A stretch of DNA of 64,000 bases, from IMG/VR virus record IMGVR_UViG_3300042923_000569, positions 62,001 through 126,000 of that record; one strand, written 5' to 3'. The translations under genes were made by a program, and so were the position numbers. Under the pieces are notes generated by a model. The model had not been told where the DNA came from. It worked only from the letters and a program-made list of their open reading frames with translations, and did no database searches. Shown here one piece after another: positions 2,520 through 58,104 of the stretch (position 1 is the first letter of the stretch; every line of letters starts with the position of its first letter).

Positions 2520-2548
2520 ATTATACCACAAAAACGTTCACTGTTTCA
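2520..2548 (-). promoter_or_regulatory. Phage promoter TGAAACA-N16-TATAAT (extended -10 TGG)
   Basis: Minus strand reads TGAAACAgtgaacgtttttgtggTATAAT; same architecture as 4 other copies. Confidence 0.75.
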
Positions 2549-2556
2549 CTTTCTTG

Positions 2557-2562
2557 TAAATA
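2557..2562 (+). promoter_or_regulatory. Late promoter TAAATA
   Basis: ~28 nt upstream of ATG 2590; back-to-back with the 2520-2548 promoter. Confidence 0.55.
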
Positions 2563-2589
2563 CATAAAGTAAACGTTTTTGGAGTACAT

Positions 2590-3081
2590 ATGAAGAAAAG
2601 ATTAAAAAATCCTAAAGAGGCAGCAGCCTATAGGAACGAACTATTAAAAAAACAAAATGGTATTGATCCAATCATTGGTATTCGCATAACTAAACCCGTA
2701 CTTGATCACCAACACTCAGGTAATCAACATTGTCGTGAAGTACTTCAAAATGAAGTAAATGGATGGGAAGGTAGAGTAGTTAACTCATACCGTAGATGCC
2801 TTGGACATTTAACTGATAAACCAATACATGAAGTACTTAGAAATCTAGCAGACTATATTGAACGTAATGGTAATATACCAGAAGAAGAACAAGTTATTCA
2901 CCATACTGCACTTACAATTGATGTAAAGAAGTTTAAGAACCTACCCGCAGCACAACAATCCTCAATTCTAATTTCTTTTGGAGTAGAACCTGAGTCTAAT
3001 TCATCTAAAAGAGCTAATCAAGCACGGAAACTTATTAAGTCCGGTGATTTGAATATGCTACACATAAAAAAAGGAGCCTAA
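2590..3081 (+). CDS. Recombination endonuclease VII-like Holliday junction resolvase (T4 gp49 family)
   Basis: R..LL..QNG.DPI, PVLDHQH, R.VL...VNGWEG (His-Me finger D-H, N and E retained), LRNLADYIE. Confidence 0.75.
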   Translation: MKKRLKNPKEAAAYRNELLKKQNGIDPIIGIRITKPVLDHQHSGNQHCREVLQNEVNGWEGRVVNSYRRCLGHLTDKPIHEVLRNLADYIERNGNIPEEEQVIHHTALTIDVKKFKNLPAAQQSSILISFGVEPESNSSKRANQARKLIKSGDLNMLHIKKGA

Positions 3082-3093
3082 TGGCTCCTTTTT
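3066..3093. terminator. Bidirectional terminator
   Basis: A7-GGAGCC-taat-GGCTCC-T5 between convergent genes. Confidence 0.85.
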
Positions 3094-3095
3094 GT

Positions 3096-5237
3096 TTATA
3101 GGTCTAATACATCACAGAATTCCATAGTACTAAAACTATCTTCTTTCACAACACGAAGTATTGAGCTTGCTCTGCTTACTAATTCTTCACGGTGTGATAC
3201 AACAAAGATGTTTTTACCACGGACTGCACTTAAATCTTGAAGCATATGCCATGAACATTCAATACCACCGGTATCAAGTCCATTATCCAACAATTCATCA
3301 ACTAATAGTACATTGATTCCCTGATAAAGTGATTCATATGTGTCACGGAATGCTAAATTCAATGCAATAATAACACGAGTTCTTTCACCACGAGACAACT
3401 GTTTGAAATCATATGACTGTCCGTTAAGTTCAATGTCTACACTTAAGTCATTTAGGAATTCAACAGTATGTTGTGAGCCTGACTTATCAATCCAGTACTG
3501 CAATCTTGAATTCAAGAATGAAATATTCTGTTCAATGATACGTCGGCGAACAAATGAGTCTTTATTCATAAGTAGCTTAGCTAGATAATCTTGATGATCT
3601 GATAGTTTTACTAACTTATTGTATTCATCATAGTCAACATGTTGAATTGAGTTTGTTTTTAACGTCTCAATTTGCTCAAAGAATGGATTCTCTGAAGCCT
3701 GTTCACGTTCCAATGATGAAACTAAAGAATTAAATGAATGTTGTAGGTCACGAACCTCATCAGTACTAAAAGTCTCTTCATATTCTTTAATCTCTGTGTT
3801 TTCTAACTCGGTAAATGCAGACATTAGTTCGTCATCATAGATATTAATATCTTCAGCAGTACTTTTCTTGATTAGTTCTTCAAGTTTGTGTTCATGTAGC
3901 TTTGCTTCTGACAAAGTACTATAAAATGTCACTGGTTTAGCTGGCATTTCAAACAATTCCAAATGAGAAACTTCAAATTGTAGAGTTTGTAGCTCTCCAG
4001 TTAGTGTTTCAATCGTGGAAGTAATCTTTTGCACTTCATCTTCTGCTTTCTGCTTCATTACAGAATGATTATCATCATGTTCTAATGAATGTTTACACAA
4101 TGGACACTTACTTTCAGCAATTTCAGCTAGTTTCTGTTGTTCATTCTGCAAATAACCTTCCTGATGAGCAATTCGATCAGTAACCGTTTTAATTTGTTGC
4201 TCTTTGAACCGTTTGGTATTCAATGCTTCTTTAAGTACTTGCTCTTTAAAAACCCAATTTGCTAATTCTTCGTGTAATGCTAACTCGGATGCAATATCGA
4301 ACTTAGAAAGTTCATCAATACTGTTAAGTACTTGTACTTTTTTGGTATGTAATGCGTTAGAATACTCTTCATGCTTAACTGCAAGTTGTGCAACTCGATT
4401 TTCAAGGTTAATACGGTTATTATTGTGTTTAATTGCTTCTTCCATTAATGAAGCTTGTGCAAATAATACATCAAAATCAATATCTTCATAATCACCTAAG
4501 CTTTGAATTAAATCATTGATAGTTTTAGCTTTCTTCTGTTCAAATTCATTAGCTCTAGTCTGTAAAGACTCAATACTTTGAACGATACGCTTGTTTGATT
4601 CAGTAATAGTTTCAATTTTGAACTTTTCCTGATCTGCAAGACGTTTAGTTTCACGGTACATATCTTTAAGTAGAGTAGCTTTCTCGGTTAGTTGGGTAAT
4701 ACCAAGTAGTTCTTCAATCATTTCACGTTGTTTCTGTTGTGAAAGTGATAAGAAAGGTTCTACGTTAGCATTAAGTACTACAATATGTTCAAAGAGTAAT
4801 TGTGATATACCTAGAATCTCATTTAAGTCTTCTTGGGTATCTTTCTTTTCCCCACGAGATTCATCTGCTACTGCTTTCCCATCTTCTAGTGTTAAGAAAT
4901 TAAAAAACGTGGGAGATCTCCCACGTTCAATTCTATATTCAACACCATCTTTCTCGAAATCAATCGTTACTTCACAATTCTTGCCGTTAATCTTGTTTAC
5001 TAGATTAGGGATCTTAATATCATTACTGATACTCTTACCATATAACCCATAAACAATACCTTGAATGATGGCAGACTTACCAACACCATTTCTGCGACCC
5101 GCCGCATCATCACCTACTGATGCATCATTGTTTTGACCTAGTACTAACGCTAGGTCAGTACTATCTAGGTCTAAAACTTGGGGTGCATTACCAAAAGAAA
5201 AGAAATTACGCATTGAAATACGTTTAATAGATAGCAT
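3096..5237 (-). CDS. Recombination endonuclease ATPase subunit (T4 gp46 / SbcC / Rad50-like)
   Basis: Walker A NGVGKS, coiled coils with CPLC zinc hook, signature LSRGE, Walker B LLVDELLD, H-loop VSH. Confidence 0.95.
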   Translation of the reverse strand: MLSIKRISMRNFFSFGNAPQVLDLDSTDLALVLGQNNDASVGDDAAGRRNGVGKSAIIQGIVYGLYGKSISNDIKIPNLVNKINGKNCEVTIDFEKDGVEYRIERGRSPTFFNFLTLEDGKAVADESRGEKKDTQEDLNEILGISQLLFEHIVVLNANVEPFLSLSQQKQREMIEELLGITQLTEKATLLKDMYRETKRLADQEKFKIETITESNKRIVQSIESLQTRANEFEQKKAKTINDLIQSLGDYEDIDFDVLFAQASLMEEAIKHNNNRINLENRVAQLAVKHEEYSNALHTKKVQVLNSIDELSKFDIASELALHEELANWVFKEQVLKEALNTKRFKEQQIKTVTDRIAHQEGYLQNEQQKLAEIAESKCPLCKHSLEHDDNHSVMKQKAEDEVQKITSTIETLTGELQTLQFEVSHLELFEMPAKPVTFYSTLSEAKLHEHKLEELIKKSTAEDINIYDDELMSAFTELENTEIKEYEETFSTDEVRDLQHSFNSLVSSLEREQASENPFFEQIETLKTNSIQHVDYDEYNKLVKLSDHQDYLAKLLMNKDSFVRRRIIEQNISFLNSRLQYWIDKSGSQHTVEFLNDLSVDIELNGQSYDFKQLSRGERTRVIIALNLAFRDTYESLYQGINVLLVDELLDNGLDTGGIECSWHMLQDLSAVRGKNIFVVSHREELVSRASSILRVVKEDSFSTMEFCDVLDL

Positions 5238-5248
5238 CCTGCCTCCAA

Positions 5249-6280
5249 TTATAGTGATAGATAAAGTTGAATCAAAAGTTCATTGTCGATAACGTTAGAT
5301 TTATTCTCTTTTATTTGAGCAATAACAATTTCATCAACTGTTTCAGTACCTGCTGAGAAATCTTCACCAGTAAAGTTGTTCTCTACTGCTTTCTTGCCTG
5401 GAATAATGTTAAATTCACGAATCTTATACAATTTGGTAAAAGTTTCACGAATAAAACCAATTTCGTCCATAGTTACCGGAATATCAATCTGAACTTTAGC
5501 AATTACATTGTCTTCAAGGTAATATGTAGGTTCAGATAGTAATTCTGATAGTGTAAATGTTCTGTAACGAGGTGCACCGGGCCACATTTTGAATTCTGGC
5601 TCTGAACCATGATCTAAGAACATAATACCCCTTGCATCATCCCAAGTATCTGAGAAGTTATGAGGGAAACAGTTTCCTGTGTACAGAATTTTAGTACCTT
5701 TTGACGTTACTTTAGCTTGTCTCTTGTGGAAGTGACCACTAAAGACATATTCACATCCATTAAACGAATCTTCCGTTTCTTTACCATGATCAGGCATCTC
5801 GACCATCTTGTTTAAAAGATAACCGGGAAGTTCTAAGTGTCCAAACACGTATTTTGCACGCAAAGAAGGAAGTTGTTTGTATTCATCATCAATTAGGAAT
5901 GGAATAAACGCACAATCATCAATGGATTCAATGTTATTGATAAAATGAATCTTATCAAACACTCTTGCCATATTAATACTTGTTACATCACGTTTATTTT
6001 TATGATACATGTCATGGTTACCTACTAAAAAGTAGGTAATATCGAATGAATCATTTAGTAATTGCATGATTTGAAGACCGAAGTCTAATGTATGAATGTT
6101 AATATTACTACGATTGTGGAAGAAATCACCCATAAAAATACAGGTTCTGATATTTCTTTCATTTGCTTCACTGATCATGAATTTAACAAATTCAAAACAA
6201 TCAGTATTGTGCTCCCTACTGTTATTCTTTAAACCTAAGTGAATATCAGTAAAAATAATAGCTTTATCAAACAGTGCCAT
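5249..6280 (-). CDS. Recombination endonuclease nuclease subunit (T4 gp47 / SbcD / Mre11-like)
   Basis: Metallophosphoesterase motifs DIH, GDFFH, GNHD, GHFH; adjacent to the gp46-like gene. Confidence 0.95.
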   Translation of the reverse strand: MALFDKAIIFTDIHLGLKNNSREHNTDCFEFVKFMISEANERNIRTCIFMGDFFHNRSNINIHTLDFGLQIMQLLNDSFDITYFLVGNHDMYHKNKRDVTSINMARVFDKIHFINNIESIDDCAFIPFLIDDEYKQLPSLRAKYVFGHLELPGYLLNKMVEMPDHGKETEDSFNGCEYVFSGHFHKRQAKVTSKGTKILYTGNCFPHNFSDTWDDARGIMFLDHGSEPEFKMWPGAPRYRTFTLSELLSEPTYYLEDNVIAKVQIDIPVTMDEIGFIRETFTKLYKIREFNIIPGKKAVENNFTGEDFSAGTETVDEIVIAQIKENKSNVIDNELLIQLYLSL

Positions 6281-7127
6281 TTTGCTTCCTTTCTAGCATC
6301 TTCATTTCGATTTCAATTTGTCGTGTATGACTTGGGTTAAAACCATGTAACTCAAGTAAATCATCACGAATATTGCGAACATTCTTTTCAGAATTAAGTA
6401 CTGAACGAAATGCGTTATTAACGAATGAAGTATAATATGCGAAAGGATTAAGCTGCACAGCAGGTTTAACCTTTTTATACAGAATACTTTCTGTAAAGAG
6501 TAGTGCGTTCTTAACTAGTTGAATTCTCGCATCACCCATCATCTCATCTAAGTATGTATAATTACGATAATTAGGTTTGTGAGATATTTCTTCTGCCAAC
6601 TTAATGAACATCTTACCGAGTTCATTTGTTTGTCTCCCATGAGTCATAGAGAAAACTCCATCCTCAAGGTCACCTTTCCAGTGTGAACGTGCAACTTCGT
6701 AAAGCTCACCAGTTTCATCAACAATATAATGTTTAAATGGTTCGAAGTTTGTACGTACTTTCTTTTCGTCGTTAGACCCTTCTACAAAAGGAATGTGTAC
6801 ATTTGTAATGACACGAATAACAACTTCATCGATTGGAACATCTGAAAGTAAAAGGTTGTTTTCTTCTGCGTGCTCTTTAGTTTTCTTGGCAGTGAATGCG
6901 TTAGCCGCACGTATTTTATCAAGTGTACTGGAATTAATGCGTTTGATACGCTCTGCTTTAGCCAGTTCAAGTAATTCTTCAGTAATTTCGGACTCGTCGA
7001 AGACGATGTAATCATACATACTATAAGCATCGTCTAGAACCCAACAGTATGACATTTTACTGATATGAATTTCTCTTAGCAAATCCGCATTGTTCAAGTA
7101 CTTCTTGCGTTTGGGTTTAATTGCCAT
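6267..7127 (-). CDS. Late-transcription sigma factor (T4 gp55-like)
   Basis: YLNNADLL, NYRNYTYLDEM, NPFAYYT motifs; gp55-gp47-gp46 synteny as in T4-like phages. Confidence 0.8.
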   Translation of the reverse strand: MAIKPKRKKYLNNADLLREIHISKMSYCWVLDDAYSMYDYIVFDESEITEELLELAKAERIKRINSSTLDKIRAANAFTAKKTKEHAEENNLLLSDVPIDEVVIRVITNVHIPFVEGSNDEKKVRTNFEPFKHYIVDETGELYEVARSHWKGDLEDGVFSMTHGRQTNELGKMFIKLAEEISHKPNYRNYTYLDEMMGDARIQLVKNALLFTESILYKKVKPAVQLNPFAYYTSFVNNAFRSVLNSEKNVRNIRDDLLELHGFNPSHTRQIEIEMKMLERKQNGTV

Positions 7128-7175
7128 TCAAAATCTCCATGTTTTTATATAAAACGATCCTTGTTTTACCTCTCT

Positions 7176-7204
7176 ATTATACCATAATTTTCAATTTCGT
7201 TTCA
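7176..7204 (-). promoter_or_regulatory. Phage promoter TGAAACG-N16-TATAAT driving the gp55-47-46 operon
   Basis: Minus strand reads TGAAACGaaattgaaaattatggTATAAT. Confidence 0.8.
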
Positions 7205-7207
7205 TAT

Positions 7208-7215
7208 TATAAATA
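7208..7215 (+). promoter_or_regulatory. Late promoter TATAAATA
   Basis: Perfect T4 late consensus upstream of ATG 7244. Confidence 0.75.
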
Positions 7216-7243
7216 CTTGATAATATTTTCACGGAGAACGTTT

Positions 7244-7981
7244 ATGATAGATCGCAGAATAAGATTAAGACCTAAAGATGCTGGGGCTAACTATGTATAT
7301 GGTGACATATCCAATGGTGGTGTACCTCAGAAATCTATTTTGTCTTTTTTACGTGTCACAAATGGTATGGTATGGAACTATACACCTATCATATCTGAAC
7401 AACGTACAGTTAACTATGAAATGGAACAACCAGTTCATACTAACAGTGGTTATAACAACTACAAAAATACATCAAATACAATACTAACAATCCAAGGTTC
7501 ATTCTATAGTAATACTGCAATGGAAGCTATGTATACACTTGCGTGTATGCACTTTGTCCGTTCAATAACTTTAATGGATTTTGGTAGATCCGCTGCACTT
7601 TCACAGAATCCAGATTTTGCAGTAGTTGGTGCACCACCACCAATACTATTACTAAGTGGGTACGGTCGTTACATTTATAACGACATTCCAGTTATTATTA
7701 AATCATACGCATTCAGTTATCCTGATGATGTATCATATATCCAAGTTCCTGTAGATTCATCTCTGGATGGATATGATTATAGTGATTCAGCAACACGTGC
7801 ATACTTCGAAAATCTTAGAGATGTTGGTACAGTCAACCCACAGAATGAAGTATGGGTTCCACAAAAAATGACTATAACATTACAACTTGAACAGCAACCT
7901 ACTCCAAGTTTCATGACTAATAAGTTTAACTTAAATTCATTTAAACGCGGTGAGATGCTTCGTAAAGGAGGATTTATTTAA
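7244..7981 (+). CDS. Baseplate / tail-tube initiator-like structural protein
   Basis: Start moved from the track's 7121 to ATG 7244 (GGAG RBS). GAPPPILLLSGYG...DIPVIIKSY..SYPDDV motif; first gene of the baseplate cluster. Confidence 0.55.
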   Translation: MIDRRIRLRPKDAGANYVYGDISNGGVPQKSILSFLRVTNGMVWNYTPIISEQRTVNYEMEQPVHTNSGYNNYKNTSNTILTIQGSFYSNTAMEAMYTLACMHFVRSITLMDFGRSAALSQNPDFAVVGAPPPILLLSGYGRYIYNDIPVIIKSYAFSYPDDVSYIQVPVDSSLDGYDYSDSATRAYFENLRDVGTVNPQNEVWVPQKMTITLQLEQQPTPSFMTNKFNLNSFKRGEMLRKGGFI

Positions 7982-8295
7982 TGTCCGTTAAATACAGTCT
8001 TTATTCACCTTATGCAAAGGTGAAACAAACTTGGTATCTTGATTATAATTTACCACAAATAATCATTCCAGCAGATTCTGATATTCAATATACAATTCCT
8101 TCTCAATATGCAGAACAACCTTGGCGTCTAGCTAAAGATTTGTATGGAAATGAAAGATTATACTACATTTTTGCATTACTTAATCCAAACACTATTGAAG
8201 ATCCAATTTATGATTTTAGTGCAGGTAAAGTAATACTAGTTCCAACATTACAACGTGTTCAAGTTTGGTTGAATGGACCACGCAGCGTTAAGTAA
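7981..8295 (+). CDS. Baseplate wedge protein (T4 gp53-like, LysM-like)
   Basis: P.RLAKDLYG...LYYIFALLN...I.DP pattern; 104 aa. Confidence 0.7.
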   Translation: MSVKYSLYSPYAKVKQTWYLDYNLPQIIIPADSDIQYTIPSQYAEQPWRLAKDLYGNERLYYIFALLNPNTIEDPIYDFSAGKVILVPTLQRVQVWLNGPRSVK

Positions 8296-8306
8296 GGATA
8301 TAAAAC

Positions 8307-17850: not shown

Positions 17851-17889
17851 AAAGGGCATCTTATGATGCCCTTTCTACTTCTATAAATA
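17851..17889 (+). terminator. Terminator followed by late promoter TATAAATA (17882-17889)
   Basis: AAAGGGCATC-ttat-GATGCCCTTT, then TATAAATA. Confidence 0.8.
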
Positions 17890-17926
17890 AAACAAATGAG
17901 AGAAAGAATTTTTATTGGAGAATAAC

Positions 17927-20900
17927 ATGGCGAACGGATTTAAATTTCAGCCTTCAAAAGTATCAGAAGCTGTTAATCAAAAATTGTTCATAAAGAGATT
18001 ACCTGAGTGGATGCAAAATCTTGAACAGATTCAAATGTTCAGTGATGATATCATTCAACAATGGTTTAATCCAGCAGATGAAGAAATCGTAGACGGTTAT
18101 ATCGGTGATCGCGGATCACCTTCGGCTTCAGGAAAGATCTTTTTAAATGAATTAGACATTGCACGTCAGGAATATCAGTTAAGTACTGCATACGTTTCAC
18201 ATAATGCAGATACCAGCGTTCGTTCTCTCCAGTTTTACCCTGACTTAGTTGGTTATTTGGAGCATTACGGTGCTCTTACTGATAATCAAGCACGTCTATT
18301 AAGTGGTAAGTTCTATTCATGGACTCCCCCAATTAACCCTAATAAAATTCAAAACTACAGTTCATATCTTTGGGATAATGAAAACGAATATGGTATTTCT
18401 CCAGACTATATCGTAATGGAACGCGGTGCTCTTAACGGAAACACTTGGTCATTACAGAACTTCTGGTACACCGTAGGTCAAACTCTACCTGATGGATCAG
18501 TAGTAACTGAACAAAGTGCTCAGGGAACTCGATTCAGCCGTGCTCAGGCACCAATTATCGAATATAATAAAAATATCGAACTAACAAATTACGGAACAAC
18601 TTTCCGTGGTGTTGTTGATTACTTATCTGACTCAGTTAAACCTGAAGATATTGTTCAAAAAAACGTAAGTAACAACGTCCGTATCGATGGACATATTCTT
18701 TCTGCTGGCGACCGTATTCTATTCACTAGTATTGGTAACCCAGGAGAAAACAACCGTATCTATAAAGTATACATCAAGCAAATGGCTGATGGAACACGTG
18801 TATATGGCCTTGTATTAGACGAAGACGAAGAAACTACAGTACGCCCTACTGGTGAGCCACTTACCGGTGACGTCGTTCTAATTCGTTCTGGTGACGTTTA
18901 CGGCAACACTTCAGTTTACTGGAATGGTCGTAGCTGGATCACTGCACAAGCTAAAACTGGAGTAAACACATTCCCTATCTTCCAACTTTATGATAAGAAC
19001 GGAATTAAACTAGACAACAGCACTGTTTATCCTAGCAGTACGTTTTCTGGTTCAAGTCTATTTGGCTTGAAAATTAACTTCAACTACGGCTTAGATAAAA
19101 TCTATGGCAAACATGTTGAACTTAGTGAATACAACTACTACATCTTTGAAAACTTCCTACAGACTACACGTTATTCGTATTCTAAAGCTGGTGCGATCAC
19201 TGAGATCCCAGGCTTGTACTTCTATAATGTAATCTCTGAAGTTGGTGGTGTATTAGAACAGAATTTAAAATCAGATTGGGTTAGAAGTGAAGACCAGTCT
19301 AAACAATACGTGCGTCAAGTTCCTGAAGTCACTAAAACTTCAATGTATCGTGTATTCAATACTGTTTCAGAAATGAATCTGTATAAGAATCCGATTGAAA
19401 ATATGTATGCTTATGTGGTCGAAAACGACTCTACCTACAAATATTACAAACCATCAAATAGTACTTTTATGAAGTGGAATGTTATCAGTAGTGTTGCAGT
19501 TCAGTCCGACCGCTTTAAACACACCTATGAATTGGCACAGAAAATTACACCAAACAATACTGATGAATCATTAGAAGTATTCTTTGATGGCGTAAAAACA
19601 TTTGACTACACTACCACATTAAATTCAGATGGTGATGTAGAAAGTATTACTTTCAACAATAGTACTTCTATTAATGAAGACAGCGTTATTGAAATTGTTA
19701 CCTATAGTCCAACTAAGGTTCCTGATGAAACACTAGGTGTATACCAGATTCCTATTAACCTACAGAACAATCCTTATAACGAATTTGTTGATTTTATTCA
19801 CCAAGGTGAATATACCCCACATTTCCTTGAAATTATTGGTAAGAATATTACCAGTGGTTCAGTTAATGATTTAAACAATTACGAACTTCGTTTAGAAGCA
19901 GGTCTTGTTGATAATTCTGTTGGTACTAAAATTATCCAGAATGAAACATCACTACTTCCATTAATGCTTCACAGTGCTAACGAGAACCTAGATTTATTCT
20001 CTGCTATTATTTTTACGCAATACGAATATTTCCGTTTCAAGAATAAGTTCACTGCACAAATGATGAAGATGTATAATGCAAATCCAGCTAACTTCCTAGC
20101 AGAGAGTGCTTCTAACATCGTTGATTTGATTTTCAATGCAATTAATGTTGGCAAAGATAATGCTTTCCCATTTGCATTAGATAATGTTGCAACTAATACA
20201 ACTACAACTAAAACTTTCATTCCACCTACTCCACAATTCTTAGGTATGTTGAAAGCATTCTCTCCTGAGAAAGCTACTTATGTACATGTTGGTCGTGATA
20301 TTGGTTGTTATAATATCGACCATATGGGTGTTGCAAGTAAGGCATATCGTGTTATTAACGGTGTGGATTTAATGGATGAAGTAATTTATGAACTAGAAAA
20401 TCGTGTCTTTAATAGCATCGATAATACTTTCAAATCAGTTGATTATATTCCAGCAATGACCACGGATTTACTAAAGCCTACTCCGTACTTCAACAGTACT
20501 GAATATACTATAGATGAATATATCCAGCTTGAACTTCGTGGTTATGTAAACTTTATCGCAACAAACGGTATTGAAAATGGAACTCACGATTATGACCAAA
20601 GTAATTGGATGACTTGGAATTACACCGGAACTACGTATGTGGTTGATGGAAATCCAACAGAAATTCCTGCTCGTGGTTCATGGCGTGCAATCTATACAGA
20701 TATGTTTGGAACCTATCGACCACATACACATCCGTGGGAAATGTTCGGGTTCTCTCAACGTCCAGATTGGTTTAATCAAGAATACGAACCAACTAAAGTT
20801 CGTCTTGGGGCTGATGCATCTGAATATGTATATGTTTACACTGCATATGTTGTTGATGAGAATGGTGACTTGGTTCCTAGTGGATTGTGGGATACTACAT

Positions 20901-30272: not shown

Positions 30273-30311
30273 CGTGCTCTCCTACGTTTTAATTTTATCT
30301 GTAACTAGTAT

Positions 30312-30340
30312 ATTATATCACAATTTTCTAACCCGTTCCA
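30312..30340 (-). promoter_or_regulatory. Phage promoter TGGAACG-N16-TATAAT for clpA; divergent late TAAATA at 30345-30350
   Basis: Minus strand reads TGGAACGggttagaaaattgtgaTATAAT. Confidence 0.7.
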
Positions 30341-35923: not shown

Positions 35924-36028
35924 TTCTTTCAGTCCTCAGTATTTGAACTTTTACTTATTTATAGTACAGCGATTGTAAAAATACTGGATAAATATTGATA
36001 ATATGACATAACATAAAAGGAATGAACT

Positions 36029-48057: not shown

Positions 48058-48065
48058 TTAGAAAC

Positions 48066-48094
48066 AAAAAGCCGACTTTTGTCGGCTTTTTTTT
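48066..48094 (+). terminator. Rho-independent terminator (late TAAATA follows at 48130-48135)
   Basis: A5-GCCGAC-tttt-GTCGGC-T8. Confidence 0.9.
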
Positions 48095-48183
48095 GTCTAC
48101 GTAGAGCATGTTTTTTGGCTTTCATGAGGTAAATACCTAGTATATTAATAATATACAATTAACATATCGTGAAAGGATAATGT

Positions 48184-50097: not shown

Positions 50098-50100
50098 ATT

Positions 50101-50147
50101 AAAGGCCAATCGCAAGATTGGCTTTTTTATTTTAACCCCAATAAATA
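50101..50147 (+). terminator. Terminator followed by late promoter TAAATA (50142-50147)
   Basis: GCCAATC-gcaa-GATTGGC-T6. Confidence 0.85.
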
Positions 50148-50178
50148 CTTGATATAACCATTATATAAGGATATTTTA

Positions 50179-52062: not shown

Positions 52063-52087
52063 AAAAAAGGAGCCTATGGCTCCTTTT
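52061..52087. terminator. Bidirectional terminator
   Basis: A8-GGAGCC-tat-GGCTCC-T4 between convergent genes. Confidence 0.85.
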
Positions 52088-52090
52088 CTC

Positions 52091-53026
52091 TTATACAGCC
52101 ATTGGTGCTTTAATGGTTGCGTCTGGATTATAATTTTCTAAACGGAATGAATCCATTGTGAACTTTTCAATATCATCAATAGTTGGATCAATCCATAGAG
52201 TAGGTAACTCTTTTGGAGTACGTTCTAATTGTTCTTTTACTTGGTCAACGTGATTTTTATAGATATGACAATCACCACCCATCCAAATAAATTCACCAAC
52301 ATCCAATCCACAAACTTGTGCTAACATATGTGTTAGTAGAGAATATGATGCAATGTTAAATGGAACACCTAAAAATAAATCAGCAGAACGTTGGTATAAC
52401 GTACAAGATAGTTTACCATCAACCACGAAGAACTGACTAAATGCATGACATGGTGGTAGGGTCATTTTATCAAGTTCACCAACATTCCATGCAGTCATAA
52501 TATGACGGCGACTATCTGGATTATTCTTTAATCCATCGATTAGTACTTGTAACTGGTCAATAGTTCTTGAAAGAACAGAAACACCCTGATAGGTATCTTG
52601 TGCAACTACAACTTCATATCCAGCTTTTTCATATTCAGCATGGCTTTCAAATGCAGGAACTACGATGTAATCAACCCACTCACGCCATTGTTTACCATAT
52701 ACCGGACCCAATTCACCATCAGAATAACCTAATGCTACTCCCTGATTCTGGTAGTTACCTGTCCAAATGGTTTTCTTTTCCCAATCACGTGTACCATAAA
52801 GTATTTCAGCTAAACGACGTTCATCATGAGAACCTTCGATAAACCACAATAGTTCAGATAGCATTGCTTTCCAGGCTAAACGTTTAGTTGTTGTTGCAGG
52901 AAAACCAATATTCAAATCGAACCGCATTGTTTGTCCAATTAATTTTATCGTACCTGTACCTGTTCTATCCGAACTTTCAGAACCTTCTTCAAGTACTTTT
53001 TTGTATAGATCGTGTAATTGTTGCAT
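52091..53026 (-). CDS. thyA: Thymidylate synthase
   Basis: DRTGTGT, ELLWF, GPVYGKQWR, DSRRH, LPPCH, YQRSADLFLGVPFNIASY, GDCHIY, APMAV. Confidence 0.97.
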   Translation of the reverse strand: MQQLHDLYKKVLEEGSESSDRTGTGTIKLIGQTMRFDLNIGFPATTTKRLAWKAMLSELLWFIEGSHDERRLAEILYGTRDWEKKTIWTGNYQNQGVALGYSDGELGPVYGKQWREWVDYIVVPAFESHAEYEKAGYEVVVAQDTYQGVSVLSRTIDQLQVLIDGLKNNPDSRRHIMTAWNVGELDKMTLPPCHAFSQFFVVDGKLSCTLYQRSADLFLGVPFNIASYSLLTHMLAQVCGLDVGEFIWMGGDCHIYKNHVDQVKEQLERTPKELPTLWIDPTIDDIEKFTMDSFRLENYNPDATIKAPMAV

Positions 53027-53333
53027 TAGTCTTCCTTAACTCGTAATTTTCATTTCTCAACTGTTTTATAGTAGTTTGGAATTGAGAAATAATATATTCT
53101 ATATTACATTTTATATTACTCAATTCACGTTCATATTTGTCTTCAGCGTCATTCTGACCATTTTTATAAGATTTGGCGATTTCATTTTCATGTTCGTATA
53201 TTAGGTCACTAAGCTTATCTTTATAATCATCAGCAGCATCATTAGATCCTTCTAAGTACCCTTCATTATAACCTAGCTCTCGCCCGTCATCTACACCGTC
53301 TGAATAACCGTCTGCATATGTATGTTCATCCAT
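52989..53333 (-). CDS. Hypothetical protein (GxxxG repeats plus coiled coil)
   Basis: 114-aa ORF in a tightly packed operon; overlaps the thyA start. Confidence 0.55.
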   Translation of the reverse strand: MDEHTYADGYSDGVDDGRELGYNEGYLEGSNDAADDYKDKLSDLIYEHENEIAKSYKNGQNDAEDKYERELSNIKCNIEYIISQFQTTIKQLRNENYELRKTNATITRSIQKST

Positions 53334-53334
53334 A

Positions 53335-53922
53335 TTATCTAAACTTTTCTATGAATTGTTTCATTTGTTGTTCAGTAGCCCTTCGTGTACCAATACCAGT
53401 CCATTTACCATGTGGTTTAGGAACACTGTCTACTTCTATGAATTGTTTTGTTTGATTGCAGTACTGATAAACTTTATTGTCCACAATATCATAGTGATAA
53501 ATTTCTTTATCATTATCATCACGGTCTAAGTACATTTGAACCGCCCATGCAGTTCCACCATCTAATTGTGACGGAGAAATTAGTTTACCGATGGTATATA
53601 CTCGGTCAGTACTACTGATTTGATAGCTATTTCTAGCTAAAAGATTATAGACATATCCAAATCTAGGAACAGATCTTTCCAAAGTTCGGTTTGCCTTTCT
53701 TAATTGTTCACGTACTTCTTTACAAGTAAGTAAATCAGTTGGTAATTGAATAACGGTTTCTTCTCTTACGTGGACTTTATGTTTTTCGAATGAAAAATGA
53801 ATTTCTTCATGTCCATTCTCTGCCGCCCACAAACCAAAAAGGCGGTCAGCTCCCGCTGCACCGCCACTAAAACATACGTTTTCAAACACCATTAACATCT
53901 CTATGAGATCATTACGATGCAT
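53335..53922 (-). CDS. Putative SLOG-superfamily (DprA/YpsA-like) nucleotide-binding protein
   Basis: SGGAAGAD, LARN..Q, GGTAWA, GIGTR motifs; start moved to ATG 53922. Confidence 0.55.
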   Translation of the reverse strand: MHRNDLIEMLMVFENVCFSGGAAGADRLFGLWAAENGHEEIHFSFEKHKVHVREETVIQLPTDLLTCKEVREQLRKANRTLERSVPRFGYVYNLLARNSYQISSTDRVYTIGKLISPSQLDGGTAWAVQMYLDRDDNDKEIYHYDIVDNKVYQYCNQTKQFIEVDSVPKPHGKWTGIGTRRATEQQMKQFIEKFR

Positions 53923-54214
53923 CTTTATCTTCCAATTTAGATAGTAGTTCTTTAATGCTATCATCTTCCAAAGAAAAGCTAGTTTCTAGAGCCGCTAAAA
54001 TAACGGCTGCTGATTTAATCAAAGATGATCTGAAATCATCAAACGAAATATGTTTATCTGGTCGGGAAGCACTTTCAAACAAGTAATAACCTGCTAGGCT
54101 AGTCCAATCATTTTTCGTTTTAAGATGATCTGCTAAAGTATTTGGGTTGCTTAATTGCCGTAAACGTTCTTCGACAATTAATTTAATTATTTCATCCCTT
54201 GATACTTGTTGCAT
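53912..54214 (-). CDS. Hypothetical protein
   Basis: 100-aa ORF coupled to its neighbours; ER.RQ...DW...LIK.AAV..A pattern (MazG-like helical fold possible). Confidence 0.6.
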   Translation of the reverse strand: MQQVSRDEIIKLIVEERLRQLSNPNTLADHLKTKNDWTSLAGYYLFESASRPDKHISFDDFRSSLIKSAAVILAALETSFSLEDDSIKELLSKLEDKDAS

Positions 54215-54891: not shown

Positions 54892-55118
54892 TATTCACCT
54901 TCCTGTGATTCTTGACCGTCAGCCTGTGCAGCTTCTTGCTCAGCCATGATTGCAGCAGAAAAATCCTGAAAACGTGAAACGATTGGAGCAACTTCAGCTA
55001 GTTCTTTAATATTAAAGACACTACGCTCAATTGCAGCTTCCATGATTTTAGTTGCATTGATAATATCAATGTACTCAAGGCTTGGACCTGAAACTTGTTC
55101 TTTTGCTTGTTCACTCAT
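54891..55118 (-). CDS. Hypothetical protein
   Basis: GGAG RBS before ATG 55118; first gene after the promoter at 55154-55182. Confidence 0.65.
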   Translation of the reverse strand: MSEQAKEQVSGPSLEYIDIINATKIMEAAIERSVFNIKELAEVAPIVSRFQDFSAAIMAEQEAAQADGQESQEGE

Positions 55119-55153
55119 TATATACACTCCATGTATTATTAATAATTATCTAT

Positions 55154-55182
55154 ATTATACCACAAAAATGTAGTACGTTTCA
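55154..55182 (-). promoter_or_regulatory. Phage promoter TGAAACG-N16-TATAAT driving the operon that ends in thyA
   Basis: Minus strand reads TGAAACGtactacatttttgtggTATAAT. Confidence 0.8.
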
Positions 55183-55222
55183 AAAAATTAGGTCGTCATC
55201 CATAACGACCCGTTATTTATGT

Positions 55223-56584
55223 TTAATTGCGTTCCTGAATATATTCGTAGTGTACTGTCACTCCAAAAGGTGATTCTTTTTTCGGATTAGAATGCACTAC
55301 AAATAATGTATCACAATAATCTGGATCACCCCACGAACCCCAAGGCTCACCATCAGTAAACATAAGTAATTGTTTAGGGCAATAATTTGCCTCTTTCATA
55401 TAATCCCAAACTGCCGTGAATAAAGTACCACCGCCGCCACGTACAGGATACGAAAGAATTTGTTCTTCTTGACCATTAGTATAATCATGAACTTCAAATA
55501 CACTAGTATCAAAAGTTAGAATTTTAATTTTAAACTGAGTAAACTGTTTAGTAATTCCATAAACTTCTGATAAAAAGTCACGTAACATTTCAGAACTAAT
55601 ACTACCGGAAGCATCAAGTGCTACGCAAATATCAATATCAAGATCTGGTTTTAAGCCTGGAAAGATTGGGTTACCAAAACCAATACCACGTGAATATGAA
55701 CGGCGGGAAGGTGTCATATAAGTAGAATCATTCTTAATTAGAGAGCGGATTGTACGGTTTAGTTTTGAACGCCAATCAATTTTAGGTTCTTTGAATTCAT
55801 CAACCATTGCACGGATTTCTGGTGGTGCACCACCAGCCATTGAAGCATTGATCATTGCATCTTTAAATGATTCCATGAAACCTGCCAATTCTTCTTCTGA
55901 GAAGTTTGGAAGATCATCATATTCATCATCAGAACCATCTGCACTATCACCTTGTTGTGGAATATCATGCTGGTCTAATGTACCACCGCCACTATTACCG
56001 GAACCACCACCGCCACCACCTTCTGATTCAGCACGCTCAAGTAGGATATTATAAATTTCCTCTGATGCCATTCCTTCAAATTCTTGACTATATAACCAAG
56101 AACTTTGAATTTCACCCATTGCCTTGTCACGTTTGATAATTTGGTTAATTGCATAATCAGCAGCACGGTTCCAGATTTTACGATCACGAGTTCCTTGACG
56201 TAAAAAATGGTTATAAGCACAGTGTAAAATTTCATGACAAAGTGCTGCAATTAAATTTTGTTGACTTAATCCGTTTAATGCTGCGTTAATTTGTTCTTCA
56301 GTGATTGAATCGATTGCAACACGTAGTTCATCTTCGTATTCTTTACGTAGTTGTGGATTTTCAATACCCATAATGAATTCAACATTATAGTAAAGGTGTT
56401 TCCCATCTACGGCAAGTGTTCTACACCACGTATTATTCTCAACTAATTTTAGTTGAGCTGCAAGTACTCCAAAAAACGGACATGCCATTACCATTGTAGT
56501 ACGTGCAATGTAAATTCGTTCAAGACATTCAGCGGATAACTTTTCTGACACTTGATAACGAACTTTTTTATTTTTATCTGACAT
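55223..56584 (-). CDS. Metallopeptidase-like + VWA domain protein (DUF2201-type; MoxR partner)
   Basis: HEILH zincin motif, WN.A.DY.IN, MIDAS DASGS, GGGGT, FTDG. Confidence 0.85.
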   Translation of the reverse strand: MSDKNKKVRYQVSEKLSAECLERIYIARTTMVMACPFFGVLAAQLKLVENNTWCRTLAVDGKHLYYNVEFIMGIENPQLRKEYEDELRVAIDSITEEQINAALNGLSQQNLIAALCHEILHCAYNHFLRQGTRDRKIWNRAADYAINQIIKRDKAMGEIQSSWLYSQEFEGMASEEIYNILLERAESEGGGGGGSGNSGGGTLDQHDIPQQGDSADGSDDEYDDLPNFSEEELAGFMESFKDAMINASMAGGAPPEIRAMVDEFKEPKIDWRSKLNRTIRSLIKNDSTYMTPSRRSYSRGIGFGNPIFPGLKPDLDIDICVALDASGSISSEMLRDFLSEVYGITKQFTQFKIKILTFDTSVFEVHDYTNGQEEQILSYPVRGGGGTLFTAVWDYMKEANYCPKQLLMFTDGEPWGSWGDPDYCDTLFVVHSNPKKESPFGVTVHYEYIQERN

Positions 56585-56598
56585 AAATTTCCCAATAC

Positions 56599-56619
56599 AA
56601 AAGGGGCATAAGCCCCTTT
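56599..56619 (-). terminator. Terminator-like hairpin between the AAA ATPase and VWA genes
   Basis: Minus strand reads AAAGGGGC-ttat-GCCCC-TTTT. Confidence 0.6.
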
Positions 56620-56626
56620 ATTTTTA

Positions 56627-57964
56627 TTATTTCATTGTACGTGCACGGCGTAATAGTGGGCCATAACTTTTAACAAACTCACGGAAGATTGGTACTTCTG
56701 CATATGTAATGTTAATGTTTGCATCAGTGATAGTACGGATAGAGTGGACAATTAGTTCTTTTTGTGTTGAAGAGAACTGACTATCCATGAATTTTAGGAA
56801 GTTAGAGCAATACAATCCCCATTGTTCAACCGCAAGTTCACCATTATGACGCTGATCAGCAAGTTCAATAATAGCTTGAGTAAGACTTAATGTAATAAAG
56901 TAGTTTTTAGAAACTTCTTGTTTATGATCACCAAAATCAGTTACTACACCAGAAAGAATGTCGGACACTTTCGGTAGATTTGCCATCTGCTCAACATAAG
57001 TAGTATATTCAATTCCGGCACGTGTACCAACGCGGCCCGCAACCATTGCTTTGAATACGGATGGTGATACATTTTGATTTTCACGATGCGTCTGAATATC
57101 TGATACACGAGTCCATGAACGAGGTGACGAACCACCACTATGACTTGTATCTTTTACACTTAACGTGTTAAACCATTTAGAACCAGTTTCTTGAATAAAT
57201 GCAATAGTGTTTGGATTTAGACGATTAGGAATTGCAAAGTTGTCAATCCATGCACGGAAATCAGCAACCATTTCAACGTGAGTCATACGGTCACGTAGTG
57301 GAGTTGCTAGACTGAATGTAACACCACCATCAGTTTCACGGTTGCCAGCGGCAAGAATCAATGCACCTTCCGGTAGTGTTAGTTCACCAACACAACGATC
57401 TAGAATTAACTGATATGATGCTGCTTGGACGATTGGCATTGCAGAGTTGATTTCATCAAAAATGATGACACCTTTCCAACCTTTAGGTAGTTGTAGAATT
57501 TGTGGTGAAGCCCACACTACACCAACCTGTTCAGTATATCCCGGATTATCTTTCAGTTGAGATTCCATAATAACATTTCCGTTAATATCGAAATATGCTT
57601 TTACTGGAATTGGAATACCACGAAGATCTGACGGCTCAATCTGTGATAGACGGAAATCAATGAAGTTGATTTCTTGGTCCAATAGTGAATTGTTATAATT
57701 ATGATAATCTTGCATAGAAACCATAACATCATCTTCATCTTCTGCACGACGAAGTAGATATGCTAGACGACCAGCACTGTTTTTACGTAAGGGGTAATGT
57801 TCATCTGCATATTGTTTTGCTAGTGCTGATTTACCGATGCCAGGTGGACCCCAAATCATAAGGCTATCACCAATTGCATCAGCTATACTCATTGCTTCTA
57901 GTACTTCAGTTGCATTCAGATCATAGTTTAGTACGTTGTTTACTGCTGCTTTTGAATCACTCAT
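56627..57964 (-). CDS. MoxR-like AAA+ ATPase
   Basis: Walker A GPPGIGKS, D.RLSQ.EPSDLRGIP, Walker B IIFDEIN, AAGNR, PLRDR, SPRSW; adjacent to a VWA gene. Confidence 0.85.
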   Translation of the reverse strand: MSDSKAAVNNVLNYDLNATEVLEAMSIADAIGDSLMIWGPPGIGKSALAKQYADEHYPLRKNSAGRLAYLLRRAEDEDDVMVSMQDYHNYNNSLLDQEINFIDFRLSQIEPSDLRGIPIPVKAYFDINGNVIMESQLKDNPGYTEQVGVVWASPQILQLPKGWKGVIIFDEINSAMPIVQAASYQLILDRCVGELTLPEGALILAAGNRETDGGVTFSLATPLRDRMTHVEMVADFRAWIDNFAIPNRLNPNTIAFIQETGSKWFNTLSVKDTSHSGGSSPRSWTRVSDIQTHRENQNVSPSVFKAMVAGRVGTRAGIEYTTYVEQMANLPKVSDILSGVVTDFGDHKQEVSKNYFITLSLTQAIIELADQRHNGELAVEQWGLYCSNFLKFMDSQFSSTQKELIVHSIRTITDANINITYAEVPIFREFVKSYGPLLRRARTMK

Positions 57965-58015
57965 ACTTCTCACTTCACCTTTATTATAATTTAATTATAT
58001 TCAGATCCATCTGAC

Positions 58016-58046
58016 AAAAAGAAAGCACTGGATTAACCAGTGCTTT
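58016..58046 (-). terminator. Rho-independent terminator
   Basis: Minus strand reads AAAGCACTGG-ttaat-CCAGTGCTTT-CTTTTT. Confidence 0.8.
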
Positions 58047-58075
58047 GTTTTATTACATCATTCTTTGATATGGTT

Positions 58076-58104
58076 ATTATACCATAATTTTTTTTAACGT
58101 TTCA
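58076..58104 (-). promoter_or_regulatory. Phage promoter TGAAACG-N16-TATAAT
   Basis: Minus strand reads TGAAACGttaaaaaaaattatggTATAAT; the -35 overlaps the upstream TGA stop codon. Confidence 0.75.

What the first reader, a model, noticed from the sequence alone, without database searches (positions are those of the whole stretch)
2520..58104. Non-standard promoter class TGAAACG-N16-TATAAT in front of the non-structural minus-strand units
Seen in sequence: five copies with identical spacing at 2520-2548 (TGAAACA), 7176-7204, 30312-30340 (TGGAACG), 55154-55182 and 58076-58104. All have an extended -10 (TG[G/A]TATAAT) and an A/T tract in the spacer. TGAAAC sits exactly where the sigma70 -35 TTGACA would be (17-bp spacing). 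Targets are gp55/47/46, clpA, the thyA operon, the MoxR region and the ORF-free element. Established: T4 redirects sigma70 with AsiA/MotA at a -30 box. Inference: an early/middle regulon read by a modified sigma70 or a phage activator with its own upstream box.
Basis: partly seen in the sequence, partly recalled or inferred. Interest (0 to 1): 0.6.

Follow-up and report, generated by a model that had tools for sequence, protein, structure and literature searches.

The report
Phage-specific middle promoters, TGAAAC box
The five sites are real promoters of a class already published for the sister phages CBB and GAP32, and comparison across related jumbo phages suggests that the phage's own RpoD-like sigma factor, not a T4-style AsiA/MotA system, reads the unusual -35 box.

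Summary
All five sites exist as described (6 matches against 0.24 expected by chance). They belong to a genome-wide set of 36 sites, all on the coding strand and mostly 10-100 nt upstream of genes. The extended logo is A-tract, TGAAAC(G/A), N13, TRTGnTATAAT, N6, then a purine at +1 in 36 of 36 sites.

The window comes from a 358-kb GAP32/CBB-like jumbo myovirus. The same motif was published for CBB as a "divergent RpoD-like promoter" with TGAAACG replacing the -35, and was noted there for GAP32, so the class is not new.

New here:
- Orthologous promoters in sister genera keep the invariant extended -10 but carry a lineage-specific box: TGGGAC in Munch, TGAGAC/T in EJP2, TGGGAC/TGAGAC in 121Q, TTGAAC in RaK2.
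- The host-type TTGAC early promoters are the same in all six compared genomes.
- Box type tracks the region-4 recognition helix of a phage-encoded RpoD-like sigma in 12 genomes, including five predicted blind.
- PA5oct lacks this sigma and lacks the class.
- No AsiA or MotA homologue was found.

Best model: a cascade from host sigma70 to the phage sigma (TGAAAC promoters) to a gp55-like late sigma. No start-site or timing data exist. The regulon also includes tRNA genes and a multi-copy structured RNA.

The parts
2520..2548 (-). Class promoter P1. Box TGAAACA at 2542-2548, TG at 2527-2528, TATAAT at 2520-2525, predicted +1 near 2513. It drives an ORF-poor structured RNA element.
   Evidence: match. 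(logo, purine at +1). site 23 (orthologous promoters in GAP32 and BF, and a TGGGAC promoter in Munch). (no convincing ORF, no Rfam family).
1960..2513 (-). Transcribed ORF-poor element: one of at least five paralogous copies of a roughly 500-nt structured RNA. It contains an internal terminator-like hairpin at 2031-2050 and a second terminator at 1806-1825. The boundaries are approximate.
   Evidence: paralogues, each downstream of a class promoter. (14-copy alignment; 42 of 80 predicted pairs show compensatory changes). (no Rfam match). (terminators).
7176..7204 (-). Class promoter P2. Box TGAAACG at 7198-7204, TATAAT at 7176-7181, predicted +1 near 7169. It sits 48 nt upstream of the gp55-like gene.
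   Evidence: (orthologous alignment in six phages: the -10 is invariant and the box is lineage-specific). site 22.
3096..7127 (-). Operon driven by P2: gp55-like late sigma (6267-7127), Mre11/gp47-like phosphoesterase (5249-6280) and Rad50/gp46-like ATPase (3096-5237). A terminator lies at 3068-3093.
   Evidence: phrog_12791, sigma factor for late transcription, E 7.6e-156. (Metallophos; AAA_23, SMC_N, Rad50 zinc hook). (terminator).
30312..30340 (-). Class promoter P3. Box TGGAACG, extended -10 TGATATAAT, predicted +1 near 30305. It drives the ClpA/ClpB-like ATPase gene at 27969-30272.
   Evidence: (AAA_2 2.3e-51, ClpB_D2-small). site 21 (the TGGAAC variant is shared with GAP32 and BF; Munch has TGGGAC; RaK2 has TTGACA).
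55154..55182 (-). Class promoter P4. Box TGAAACG, predicted +1 near 55147. It drives small ORFs, a DprA/SLOG-like gene (53335-53964) and thyA (52091-53026).
   Evidence: (Thymidylat_synt 3.8e-103). (phrog_768). site 20.
58076..58104 (-). Class promoter P5. Box TGAAACG, predicted +1 near 58069. It overlaps the stop codon of upstream ORF 58102-58476. It drives an AAA/MoxR-like gene (56627-57973) and a DUF2201/VWA gene (55223-56584).
   Evidence: (DUF2201_N 1.6e-32, DUF2201 1.4e-17; weak AAA hits). site 19.
8021..8049 (+). Chance match; not a member of the class.
   Evidence: one mismatch in the box and no TG before TATAAT. It lies inside ORF 7981-8295. It is the only + strand hit in the whole genome.
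7208..7215 (+). T4-late-like TATAAATA facing away from P2, in front of the first + strand structural gene. Its SD and ATG are near 7233-7253.
   Evidence: position. (the reverse complement, GTATTTAT, is invariant in six phages, as is the adjacent TTCTCC, which is the GGAGAA Shine-Dalgarno of the divergent gene).

Best explanation
The TGAAAC(G/A)-N16-TATAAT sites are the middle-class promoters of a GAP32/CBB-like jumbo myovirus.

Proposed cascade:
1. Host RNA polymerase with sigma70 transcribes early genes from ordinary TTGAC-type promoters. These early genes include a phage RpoD/RpoS-like sigma factor of about 330 aa, encoded outside the window at genome 261344-262348 on the - strand.
2. This sigma binds host core polymerase. 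Its regions 2 and 3 read a host-like extended -10 (TRTGnTATAAT). Its divergent region 4 reads TGAAAC at the -35 position. Region 4 here is a helix-turn-helix interrupted by a roughly 12-residue hairpin, followed by the recognition helix KATLSRRY.
3. The regulon comprises replication, recombination and nucleotide-metabolism genes, ClpA-like and MoxR-like ATPases, tRNA genes, a multi-copy structured RNA, and the gp55-like late sigma.
4. The gp55-like sigma then switches on TATAAATA-type late promoters of the structural genes.

Shown: the motif, its placement, its conservation, lineage-specific box turnover, the presence and fold of the sigma, and the sigma-box correspondence.
For: 1. Promoter character. 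There are 36 sites, all on the coding strand and mostly 10-100 nt upstream of ORFs. The spacing is fixed at 17 bp and +1 is a purine in 36 of 36.
2. Published precedent in CBB and GAP32 (PMC5259590).
3. Regulon conserved, box replaced. For 27 promoter-proximal genes, the orthologues in GAP32, BF, Munch, 121Q and RaK2 mostly keep a promoter at a similar distance with an invariant TATAAT but a lineage-specific box. Counts of TGAAAC-type versus TGGGAC-type sites: this phage 37/1, GAP32 39/0, BF 39/1, Munch 1/32, 121Q 4/15. EJP2 uses TGAGAC/T.
4. Internal control. The hairpin-embedded TTGAC early promoters are essentially the same sequence in all six compared genomes. So elements read by the (assumed constant) host sigma do not drift, while the box does.
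5. Candidate reader. The sigma has Sigma70_r2 and r3 domains. Its best family and PDB matches are RpoD, RpoS and SigA. The AlphaFold model has a confident sigma4-like C-terminal domain and matches whole sigmaS/sigmaA chains with probability 1.00. Homologues occur in every lineage that has the architecture.
6. Covariation. In 12 genomes the recognition-helix type matches the box type. A blind prediction for five metagenomic genomes was correct 5 of 5: TGAAAC/TGGGAC counts were 31/0, 20/0, 19/0, 0/28 and 0/28, with all controls at 0.
7. Negative case. PA5oct has the gp55-like gene but no homologue of this sigma. It has no box class and no strand bias of TGnTATAAT. Its paper reports only TTGAC/TATAATA promoters.
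8. The sigma gene is preceded by sigma70-like promoter elements and not by a class promoter.
9. Core binding. Sigma residues 60-160 docked on E. coli beta-prime residues 240-340 score 0.63, against a best of 0.01 among 3 controls. That mark was reached by 51 of 78 solved complexes and 2 of 108 mismatched pairs. The runs agree in at least 75% of contacts, and partner pLDDT is at least 77.
10. Alternatives weakened. No AsiA or MotA homologue was found. The adjacent XRE-type HTH protein is absent from BF, Munch, 121Q and RaK2.
Against: - No transcription start or timing data exist. No public RNA run holds this phage.
- The sigma-box correspondence follows phylogeny, with about five independent types. 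Any other co-inherited phage protein would show the same correlation.
- Read as nTGAAA with an 18-bp spacer plus TGnTATAAT, the sites score 10 of 12 in a plain sigma70 scan. A perfect extended -10 can work without a -35, so host sigma70 alone might fire them.
- Pfam Sigma70_r4 does not match the sigma. The tryptophan pair of region 2.3 is replaced (alignment). Some residues that would contact -12 vary between lineages although the -10 does not.
- The docking pass may reflect memory of solved sigma/beta-prime complexes.
- In RaK2 the box is close to TTGACA and the class is less distinct.
Confidence: 0.6

Rival explanations
1. Host sigma70 holoenzyme reads the extended -10. The box is bound by a phage-encoded activator or sigma appropriator that works like T4 MotA/AsiA but is unrelated in sequence. 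The phage RpoD-like sigma would then serve another purpose.
For: - The architecture resembles T4 middle promoters: the -10 is kept and the -35 is replaced by a phage box, in front of replication and nucleotide-metabolism genes (established knowledge of T4).
- Lineage-specific box turnover requires only some phage-encoded reader, not necessarily the sigma.
- The -10 is a perfect host consensus.
- AsiA homologues are reported in a subset of related 'group 2' jumbo phages (PMC7824862).
Against: - No AsiA, MotA_activ or MotCF match at E <= 10.
- The only DNA-binding gene next to the sigma is not conserved across lineages that have the class.
- This model leaves a clade-wide, fast-evolving, full-length sigma without a promoter class, although there are exactly three classes and three sigmas (host, RpoD-like, gp55-like).
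- PA5oct lacks both the sigma and the class.
Confidence: 0.25
2. Unmodified host sigma70 alone uses these sites as strong extended -10 promoters. The box is then either a tolerated weak -35 (nTGAAA at 18 bp) or the operator of a phage repressor or timing factor, so the class would be early or constitutive rather than sigma-switched.
For: - The generic sigma70 scan scores the sites 10 of 12, with TG.
- TGnTATAAT promoters can dispense with a -35 (established knowledge).
- The RaK2 version is nearly TTGACA.
Against: - A tolerated weak -35 would not be held at about 10 bits of information in 36 sites, with C at box position 6 in 33 of 36.
- It would not be replaced in concert in about 20-39 promoters per lineage while genuine TTGAC promoters stay constant.
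- TTGAC-type and box-type promoters occupy different genome regions.
Confidence: 0.12
3. The sites are not promoters but copies of a dispersed repeat or a chance pattern.
For: Five of the 36 sites precede paralogous copies of one RNA element, so some copies could have spread by duplication.
Against: - 0 of 100 shuffles reach the observed count.
- Spacers and flanks are unrelated between sites.
- Position and orientation relative to unrelated genes are conserved across genera.
- +1 is a purine in 36 of 36 sites.
Confidence: 0.02

Closest known systems
'Divergent RpoD-like promoter' of Pectobacterium phage CBB, also noted for Cronobacter phage GAP32 (Buttimer et al. 2017, PMC5259590, citing Abbasifar et al. 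2014)
   Same: Same consensus: TGAAACG in place of TTGACA, with a classic -10. Same clade. Same kind of downstream genes (DNA synthesis, and one copy upstream of the gp55-like gene). I counted 28 exact TGAAAC-N17-TATAAT sites in GAP32 and 26 in Serratia phage BF.
   Different: The paper reports 18 copies found by MEME and names no reader. This genome is a different phage (about 76% nucleotide identity to GAP32) with 36 copies. The box turnover in sister genera and the link to the phage sigma are not in that paper.
T4 middle promoters (MotA box plus sigma70 -10, with AsiA remodelling sigma70 region 4)
   Same: A host-type -10 is kept and the -35 is replaced by a phage-specific box. Both drive replication, recombination and nucleotide-metabolism genes ahead of gp55-dependent late transcription. 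This rests on established knowledge of T4.
   Different: The box sequence differs (TGAAAC versus TGCTT). Its position is -35 to -29 rather than centred on -30. No AsiA or MotA homologues were found. The -10 here is far stricter, with an obligatory TG. The phage carries a full RpoD-like sigma, which T4 lacks.
Phage-encoded sigma cascades, such as Bacillus phage SPO1 (host sigmaA, then gp28, then gp33/34)
   Same: A phage sigma70-family protein made early redirects host core polymerase to middle promoters, and a later factor takes over. SPO1's use of phage sigmas for middle and late transcription is stated in the abstract of PMC13401047.
   Different: From my own knowledge, SPO1 gp28 promoters differ from the host consensus in both hexamers. 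Here only the -35 differs, and the -10 with TG is the host optimum. The late factor here is gp55-like.
Extended -10 (TGnTATAAT, 'TRTG') promoters of bacteria, and the -35-less middle/late promoters of Thermus phage P23-45
   Same: An invariant TGnTATAAT with T and R at -17/-16.
   Different: Those promoters need no upstream box. Here a roughly 10-bit box sits at a fixed 17-bp distance.
ECF-type -35 elements (for example the B. subtilis sigmaW consensus TGAAAC-N16-CGTA, recalled from memory)
   Same: The hexamer at -35 is identical.
   Different: The -10 is unrelated. The phage sigma is not ECF-like: it has region 3 and is nearest to RpoD/RpoS. The resemblance is probably coincidental.

Membership tests
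CBB/GAP32 'divergent RpoD-like' promoter class | TGAAACG at the -35 position with a classic TATA-type -10 | tested here: met
.
CBB/GAP32 'divergent RpoD-like' promoter class | Occurs in phages of the GAP32/CBB clade, upstream of DNA-metabolism genes and the gp55-like gene | tested here: met
   (clade). (targets). (28 sites in GAP32, 26 in BF).
Sigma70-type bipartite promoter | -10 hexamer TATAAT, with a purine start about 7 nt downstream | tested here: met
   The start itself is inferred from sequence only.
Sigma70-type bipartite promoter | -35 hexamer close to TTGACA at 16-18 bp | tested here: not met
   TGAAAC at 17 bp matches 2 of 6 positions. Read as nTGAAA at 18 bp it matches 4 of 6. True TTGAC promoters form a separate class elsewhere in the genome.
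T4-type middle promoter (sigma appropriation) | MotA box (TGCTT core) centred near -30 | tested here: not met
   The box is TGAAAC(G/A) at -35 to -29.
T4-type middle promoter (sigma appropriation) | AsiA and MotA encoded by the phage | tested here: not met
   No match to PF09010, PF09114 or PF09158 at E <= 10 in six frames. Analogues unrelated in sequence cannot be excluded.
Phage-sigma-dependent middle promoter | The phage encodes a sigma70-family protein with core-binding region 2 and a DNA-binding region 4 | tested here: met
   Region 4 is seen only in the model and the PDB alignment, not by Pfam. Docking on beta-prime scored 0.63 against a best control of 0.01.
Phage-sigma-dependent middle promoter | Promoter specificity element co-varies with the sigma's recognition helix | tested here: met
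   Twelve genomes and five box types. A blind prediction was correct 5 of 5. This is correlative and confounded by phylogeny.
Phage-sigma-dependent middle promoter | Holoenzyme with the phage sigma initiates at these sites, and expression depends on prior phage protein synthesis | not testable with these tools
   No RNA runs are available. This needs in vitro transcription and time-resolved start-site mapping.
ECF sigma promoter | AAC-type -35 together with a CGT-type -10, read by a two-domain (regions 2 and 4 only) sigma | tested here: not met
   The -10 is TATAAT. The sigma has region 3 and is RpoD/RpoS-like.

The most novel reading that the evidence does not exclude
The RpoD-like sigmas of RaK2/GAP32-like jumbo phages form a natural specificity series. 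Regions 2 and 3 have kept host-like reading of the extended -10. An insertion-bearing region 4 has re-targeted the -35 position at least five times: TGAAAC, TGGGAC with a 1-bp shift, TGAGAC/T, TGGGAC/TGAGAC, and TTGAAC. Each phage genus would then own a private sigma/promoter pair that insulates its middle regulon from the host and from co-infecting relatives. That regulon includes a previously undescribed multi-copy structured RNA of about 500 nt.
Probability: 0.45. Interest if true: 0.6.

Novelty: new member of a known kind. Interest (0 to 1): 0.35.

Why it matters
In itself the finding re-discovers a promoter class already printed for CBB and GAP32, so it mainly improves the annotation of this genome: transcription units, temporal classes and a regulon list.

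The comparative result adds a concrete, cheap experiment. If the phage sigma reads the box, the clade offers ready-made orthogonal sigma/promoter pairs that all share one -10. That is useful for studying how sigma region 4 chooses a -35 sequence, and as parts for synthetic circuits in enterobacteria.

It would also settle how T4-distant jumbo myoviruses that lack AsiA and MotA time their middle genes.

The structured RNA family found downstream of five of these promoters may be the more surprising object and deserves its own study.

Tried and rejected
- **RNA evidence.** The look-up of sequencing runs found five DNA-type holders and no RNA run. Read laying was therefore not used, because contigs cannot show starts.
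- **A second sigma in the window.** The weak Sigma70_r2 hit at window 52850-53029 is thymidylate synthase, a false positive.
- **Pfam Sigma70_r4.** No match in the genome. Region 4 had to be inferred from the PDB alignment and the model.
- **AsiA and MotA.** No match.
- **XRE-type HTH protein next to the sigma as box reader.** Rejected, because it is absent from BF, Munch, 121Q and RaK2.
- **Literature.** The RaK2 paper says nothing on promoters or sigma. Searches for phAPEC6, PBECO4 and 121Q promoter work, and for jumbo-phage middle promoters, found no experimental study of this class.
- **Rfam** on the ORF-poor element and its paralogues: nothing at E <= 1 except a sub-threshold sRNA-like hit on a terminator hairpin.
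- **Exact TATAAATA as the late-promoter marker.** Only 13 copies, so too strict to map the late class properly. Not pursued.
- **Vibrio phage 2.275.O** has two sigma paralogues. Its promoters were not analysed.
- **Not tested.** That the host sigma70 is the same across the hosts of these phages comes from general knowledge. The host of this phage is unknown.
Full report
**Observation.** A search for TGAAACG-N16-TATAAT with one mismatch finds the five reported sites on the minus strand at the stated coordinates, plus one plus-strand hit at 8021-8049. That is 6 matches against 0.24 expected, and none of 100 shuffles reached 6. The plus-strand hit lacks the TG before TATAAT and lies inside an ORF, so it is chance.
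- a gp55-like late sigma (phrog_12791), an Mre11-like phosphoesterase and a Rad50-like ATPase;
- a ClpA/ClpB-like ATPase;
- an operon ending in thymidylate synthase;
- an AAA/MoxR-like gene with a DUF2201/VWA gene;
- an ORF-poor stretch.

**Context.** The window is part of a 357,873-bp phage genome with terminal repeats. At the tested 5-kb stretch it is 72-76% identical to Cronobacter phage GAP32, Pectobacterium phage CBB, Serratia phage BF and relatives. Almost all genes outside the structural block lie on the minus strand, so the strand bias of the motif is the coding-strand bias.

**Genome-wide picture.**
- There are 36 sites, all on the coding strand. Thirty are intergenic by a crude gene call, and most are 10-100 nt upstream of an ORF.
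- The motif is nearly all-or-none. With an exact box, the -10 is exactly TATAAT in 32 cases and one mismatch off in two. Of the 33 TGAAAC...TATAAT pairs found at spacings of 12-21, 32 are at 17.
- Among all 583 TATAAT words in the genome, TGAAAC is by far the commonest hexamer 17 bp upstream.

**Already known.** Buttimer et al. 2017 (PMC5259590) describe in CBB a second promoter type, "a classic -10" with "TGAAACG instead of TTGACA". They report 18 copies, 11 of them in front of DNA-synthesis genes and one upstream of the gp55-like gene, and state that GAP32 has it too. They also list RpoD-like early promoters, an ATAAATA late motif and a phage sigma-70-like gene, but they do not assign a reader to the TGAAACG class. 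I found no experimental work on it. The Iyer et al. review notes only that such "group 2" jumbo phages carry both a minimal sigma and an RpoD-like sigma, and that AsiA occurs in a subset.

**What could read the box.** The T4 route is not supported: no AsiA, MotA_activ or MotCF match appears in six frames even at E <= 10. The genome does encode a sigma-70-family protein at 261344-262348 on the minus strand.
- It has Pfam regions 2 and 3, and its best family and PDB matches are RpoD, RpoS and SigA.
- An AlphaFold model built from 40 homologues has a confident C-terminal four-helix domain. A hairpin insertion of about 12 residues separates the two helix-turn-helix helices. The whole model matches sigmaS and sigmaA chains with probability 1.00.
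- Its region 2 docks on the E. coli beta-prime clamp helices with a score of 0.63, against a best of 0.01 among 3 controls. That mark was reached by 51 of 78 solved complexes and 2 of 108 mismatched pairs. The runs agree in at least 75% of contacts, and partner pLDDT is at least 77. Because sigma/beta-prime complexes are solved, this shows likeness rather than proof.
- The gene follows sigma70-like promoter elements, not a TGAAAC promoter. It lies at the edge of the 220-262 kb region where TTGAC-type promoters cluster and from which the TGAAAC class is nearly absent.

**Comparative test.** Homologues of this sigma occur throughout the RaK2-like clade: 70-78% identity in GAP32, CBB, BF and Yen9-04; 42-46% in Munch and EJP2; 35% in 121Q and PBECO4; 31% in RaK2 and K64-1.
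- Exact TGAAAC-N17-TATAAT occurs 28 times in GAP32 and 26 times in BF, all on the coding strand. It occurs 0, 1 and 0 times in Munch, 121Q and RaK2.
- Those three phages have the same architecture with another box: cTTGGGACAAA in Munch (mostly an 18-bp spacer), TGGGAC/TGAGAC/TTGGAC in 121Q, and TTGAAC(A) in RaK2. EJP2 has TGAGAC/T.
- At the orthologous promoter of the gp55-like gene, the -10 is invariant in six phages. The box reads TGAAACG, TGGAACG, TGGAACG, TGGGACA, TGGGACA and TGAATAA.
- For 27 promoter-proximal genes, orthologues mostly keep a promoter at a similar distance with the lineage's own box. Site-specific deviations are inherited: a C-to-T change in one box appears in all six phages.
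- By contrast, the hairpin-embedded early promoters (GGGTTGAC-loop-GTCAGCCC-TTTT, then a -10) are essentially the same sequence in all six genomes.
- So the element presumably read by the host sigma is constant, while the box evolves in concert within each phage lineage. The same box serves phages of Cronobacter, Serratia, Pectobacterium and other hosts. That the hosts' sigma70 is the same rests on general knowledge, not on a test here.

**Link to the sigma.**
- The putative recognition helix is (T/S)SKATLSRRY in all six TGAAAC genomes. It is SRTSLHRCY, with a 2-residue-longer hairpin, in all three TTGGGAC genomes. It is NRCTIHRRY in EJP2, SRSSIHRKY in 121Q and VRGTLHYKF in RaK2.
- For five complete metagenomic genomes I predicted the box from sigma identity before counting. 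The TGAAAC/TGGGAC counts were 31/0, 20/0, 19/0, 0/28 and 0/28, with zero hits in all reversed-pattern controls.
- PA5oct has the gp55-like gene but no homologue of this sigma. It has no box class and no excess or strand bias of TGnTATAAT. Its own paper reports only TTGAC/TATAATA promoters.
- The XRE-type HTH gene next to the sigma is absent from BF, Munch, 121Q and RaK2, so it cannot be the general reader.

**Caveats.**
- The correspondence is structured by phylogeny, with about five independent types, so another co-inherited phage protein cannot be excluded.
- A plain sigma70 scan scores the sites 10 of 12 when read as nTGAAA with an 18-bp spacer. A perfect extended -10 may allow some host-sigma70 activity.
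- Pfam does not recognise region 4, and parts of region 2.3-2.4 differ from RpoD.
- No RNA data exist for this phage.
- I therefore put 0.6 on the phage-sigma model, 0.25 on host sigma70 plus an unrecognised phage activator or appropriator, about 0.12 on host sigma70 alone, and 0.02 on a non-promoter repeat or chance pattern.

**Regulon content.** Besides protein genes, two class promoters drive tRNA genes: Arg and Leu at one, Asn and Gln at the other. Five drive paralogous copies of an ORF-poor element of about 500 nt, one of which is the window's "ORF-free element".
- An alignment of 14 copies from four phage lineages shows long invariant blocks. RNAalifold predicts 80 pairs, of which 42 are kept through changes on both sides, including a long-range closing helix.
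- There is no Rfam match.
- A conserved 19-nt word from the element finds 31 stretches in viral contigs.
- Its function is unknown and I did not pursue it further.

**Verdict.** The class is already in the literature for sister phages. The lineage-specific box turnover and the sigma-box correspondence appear to be new, and they make the mechanism directly testable.

Noticed in passing
window ~1960-2513 (-). Paralogues at G000:C1 ~337960-338570, ~256930-257416, ~208090-208530 and ~148580-149130 (all on the - strand).: A multi-copy structured RNA of about 500 nt, each copy with its own TGAAAC promoter. There are at least 5 copies here, and further copies in GAP32, BF, Munch and 121Q; none was found in RaK2 by blastn. 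Of 80 predicted base pairs, 42 show compensatory changes across 14 copies. There is no Rfam match, no tRNA and no shared ORF. A conserved 19-nt word finds 31 stretches in viral contigs, those identifiable by length being from this clade. Function unknown; it may be a new RNA family.
   Followed up: partly
L113 (G000:C1:307500-308230) and L114 (G000:C1:288700-289430), outside the window: Two class promoters with a gap of about 600-700 nt to the next ORF drive tRNA genes: Arg(ccg) and Leu(taa) at one, Asn(gtt) and Gln(ttg) at the other. So phage tRNAs belong to the same regulon.
   Followed up: yes
G000:C1 ~220-262 kb (outside the window); the same element occurs in GAP32, BF, Munch, 121Q, RaK2 and EJP2: Early-type promoters are embedded in a conserved hairpin: GGGTTGAC, a loop, GTCAGCCC, a T-run, then a -10. 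The stem of a terminator-like hairpin carries the TTGAC -35 of the next promoter. The sequence is nearly identical across genera.
   Followed up: partly
window 727-734 (-), 7208-7215 (+), 17882-17889 (+), 35956-35963 (-): Exact TATAAATA, the T4 late-promoter consensus, is strongly depleted genome-wide: 13 copies against roughly 80 expected on both strands. Nine of the 13 are intergenic, and the four in the window all lie just upstream of genes. The copy at 7208 faces away from promoter P2 and is invariant in six phages.
   Followed up: partly
Phage sigma protein P0002, residues ~291-302 (gene at G000:C1:261344-262348, -): The model shows a beta-hairpin insertion of about 12 residues (GYIDGKGKFV) between the two helices of the region-4 helix-turn-helix. 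The hairpin is two residues longer in Munch-type sigmas, whose promoters use an 18-bp rather than a 17-bp spacer. This is a correlation only.
   Followed up: partly
genome-wide; examples appear in the outputs: Another recurrent word at the -35 position of TATAAT sites is ACTTGC(A/T) or GTACTTGAC, about 8-10 copies here and also present in 121Q, Munch and EJP2. It may be a sub-class of early promoters.
   Followed up: no
window 17915-27937 (+): A single ORF of 3340 aa lies in the structural block, preceded by a TATAAATA at 17882-17889. It was not annotated here.
   Followed up: no
L107 and L108 (Vibrio phage 2.275.O, MG592671.1): This distant relative carries two paralogues of the RpoD-like sigma, at 30% and 26% identity. 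The reading frame of one match contains a TAG. Its promoter classes were not examined.
   Followed up: no
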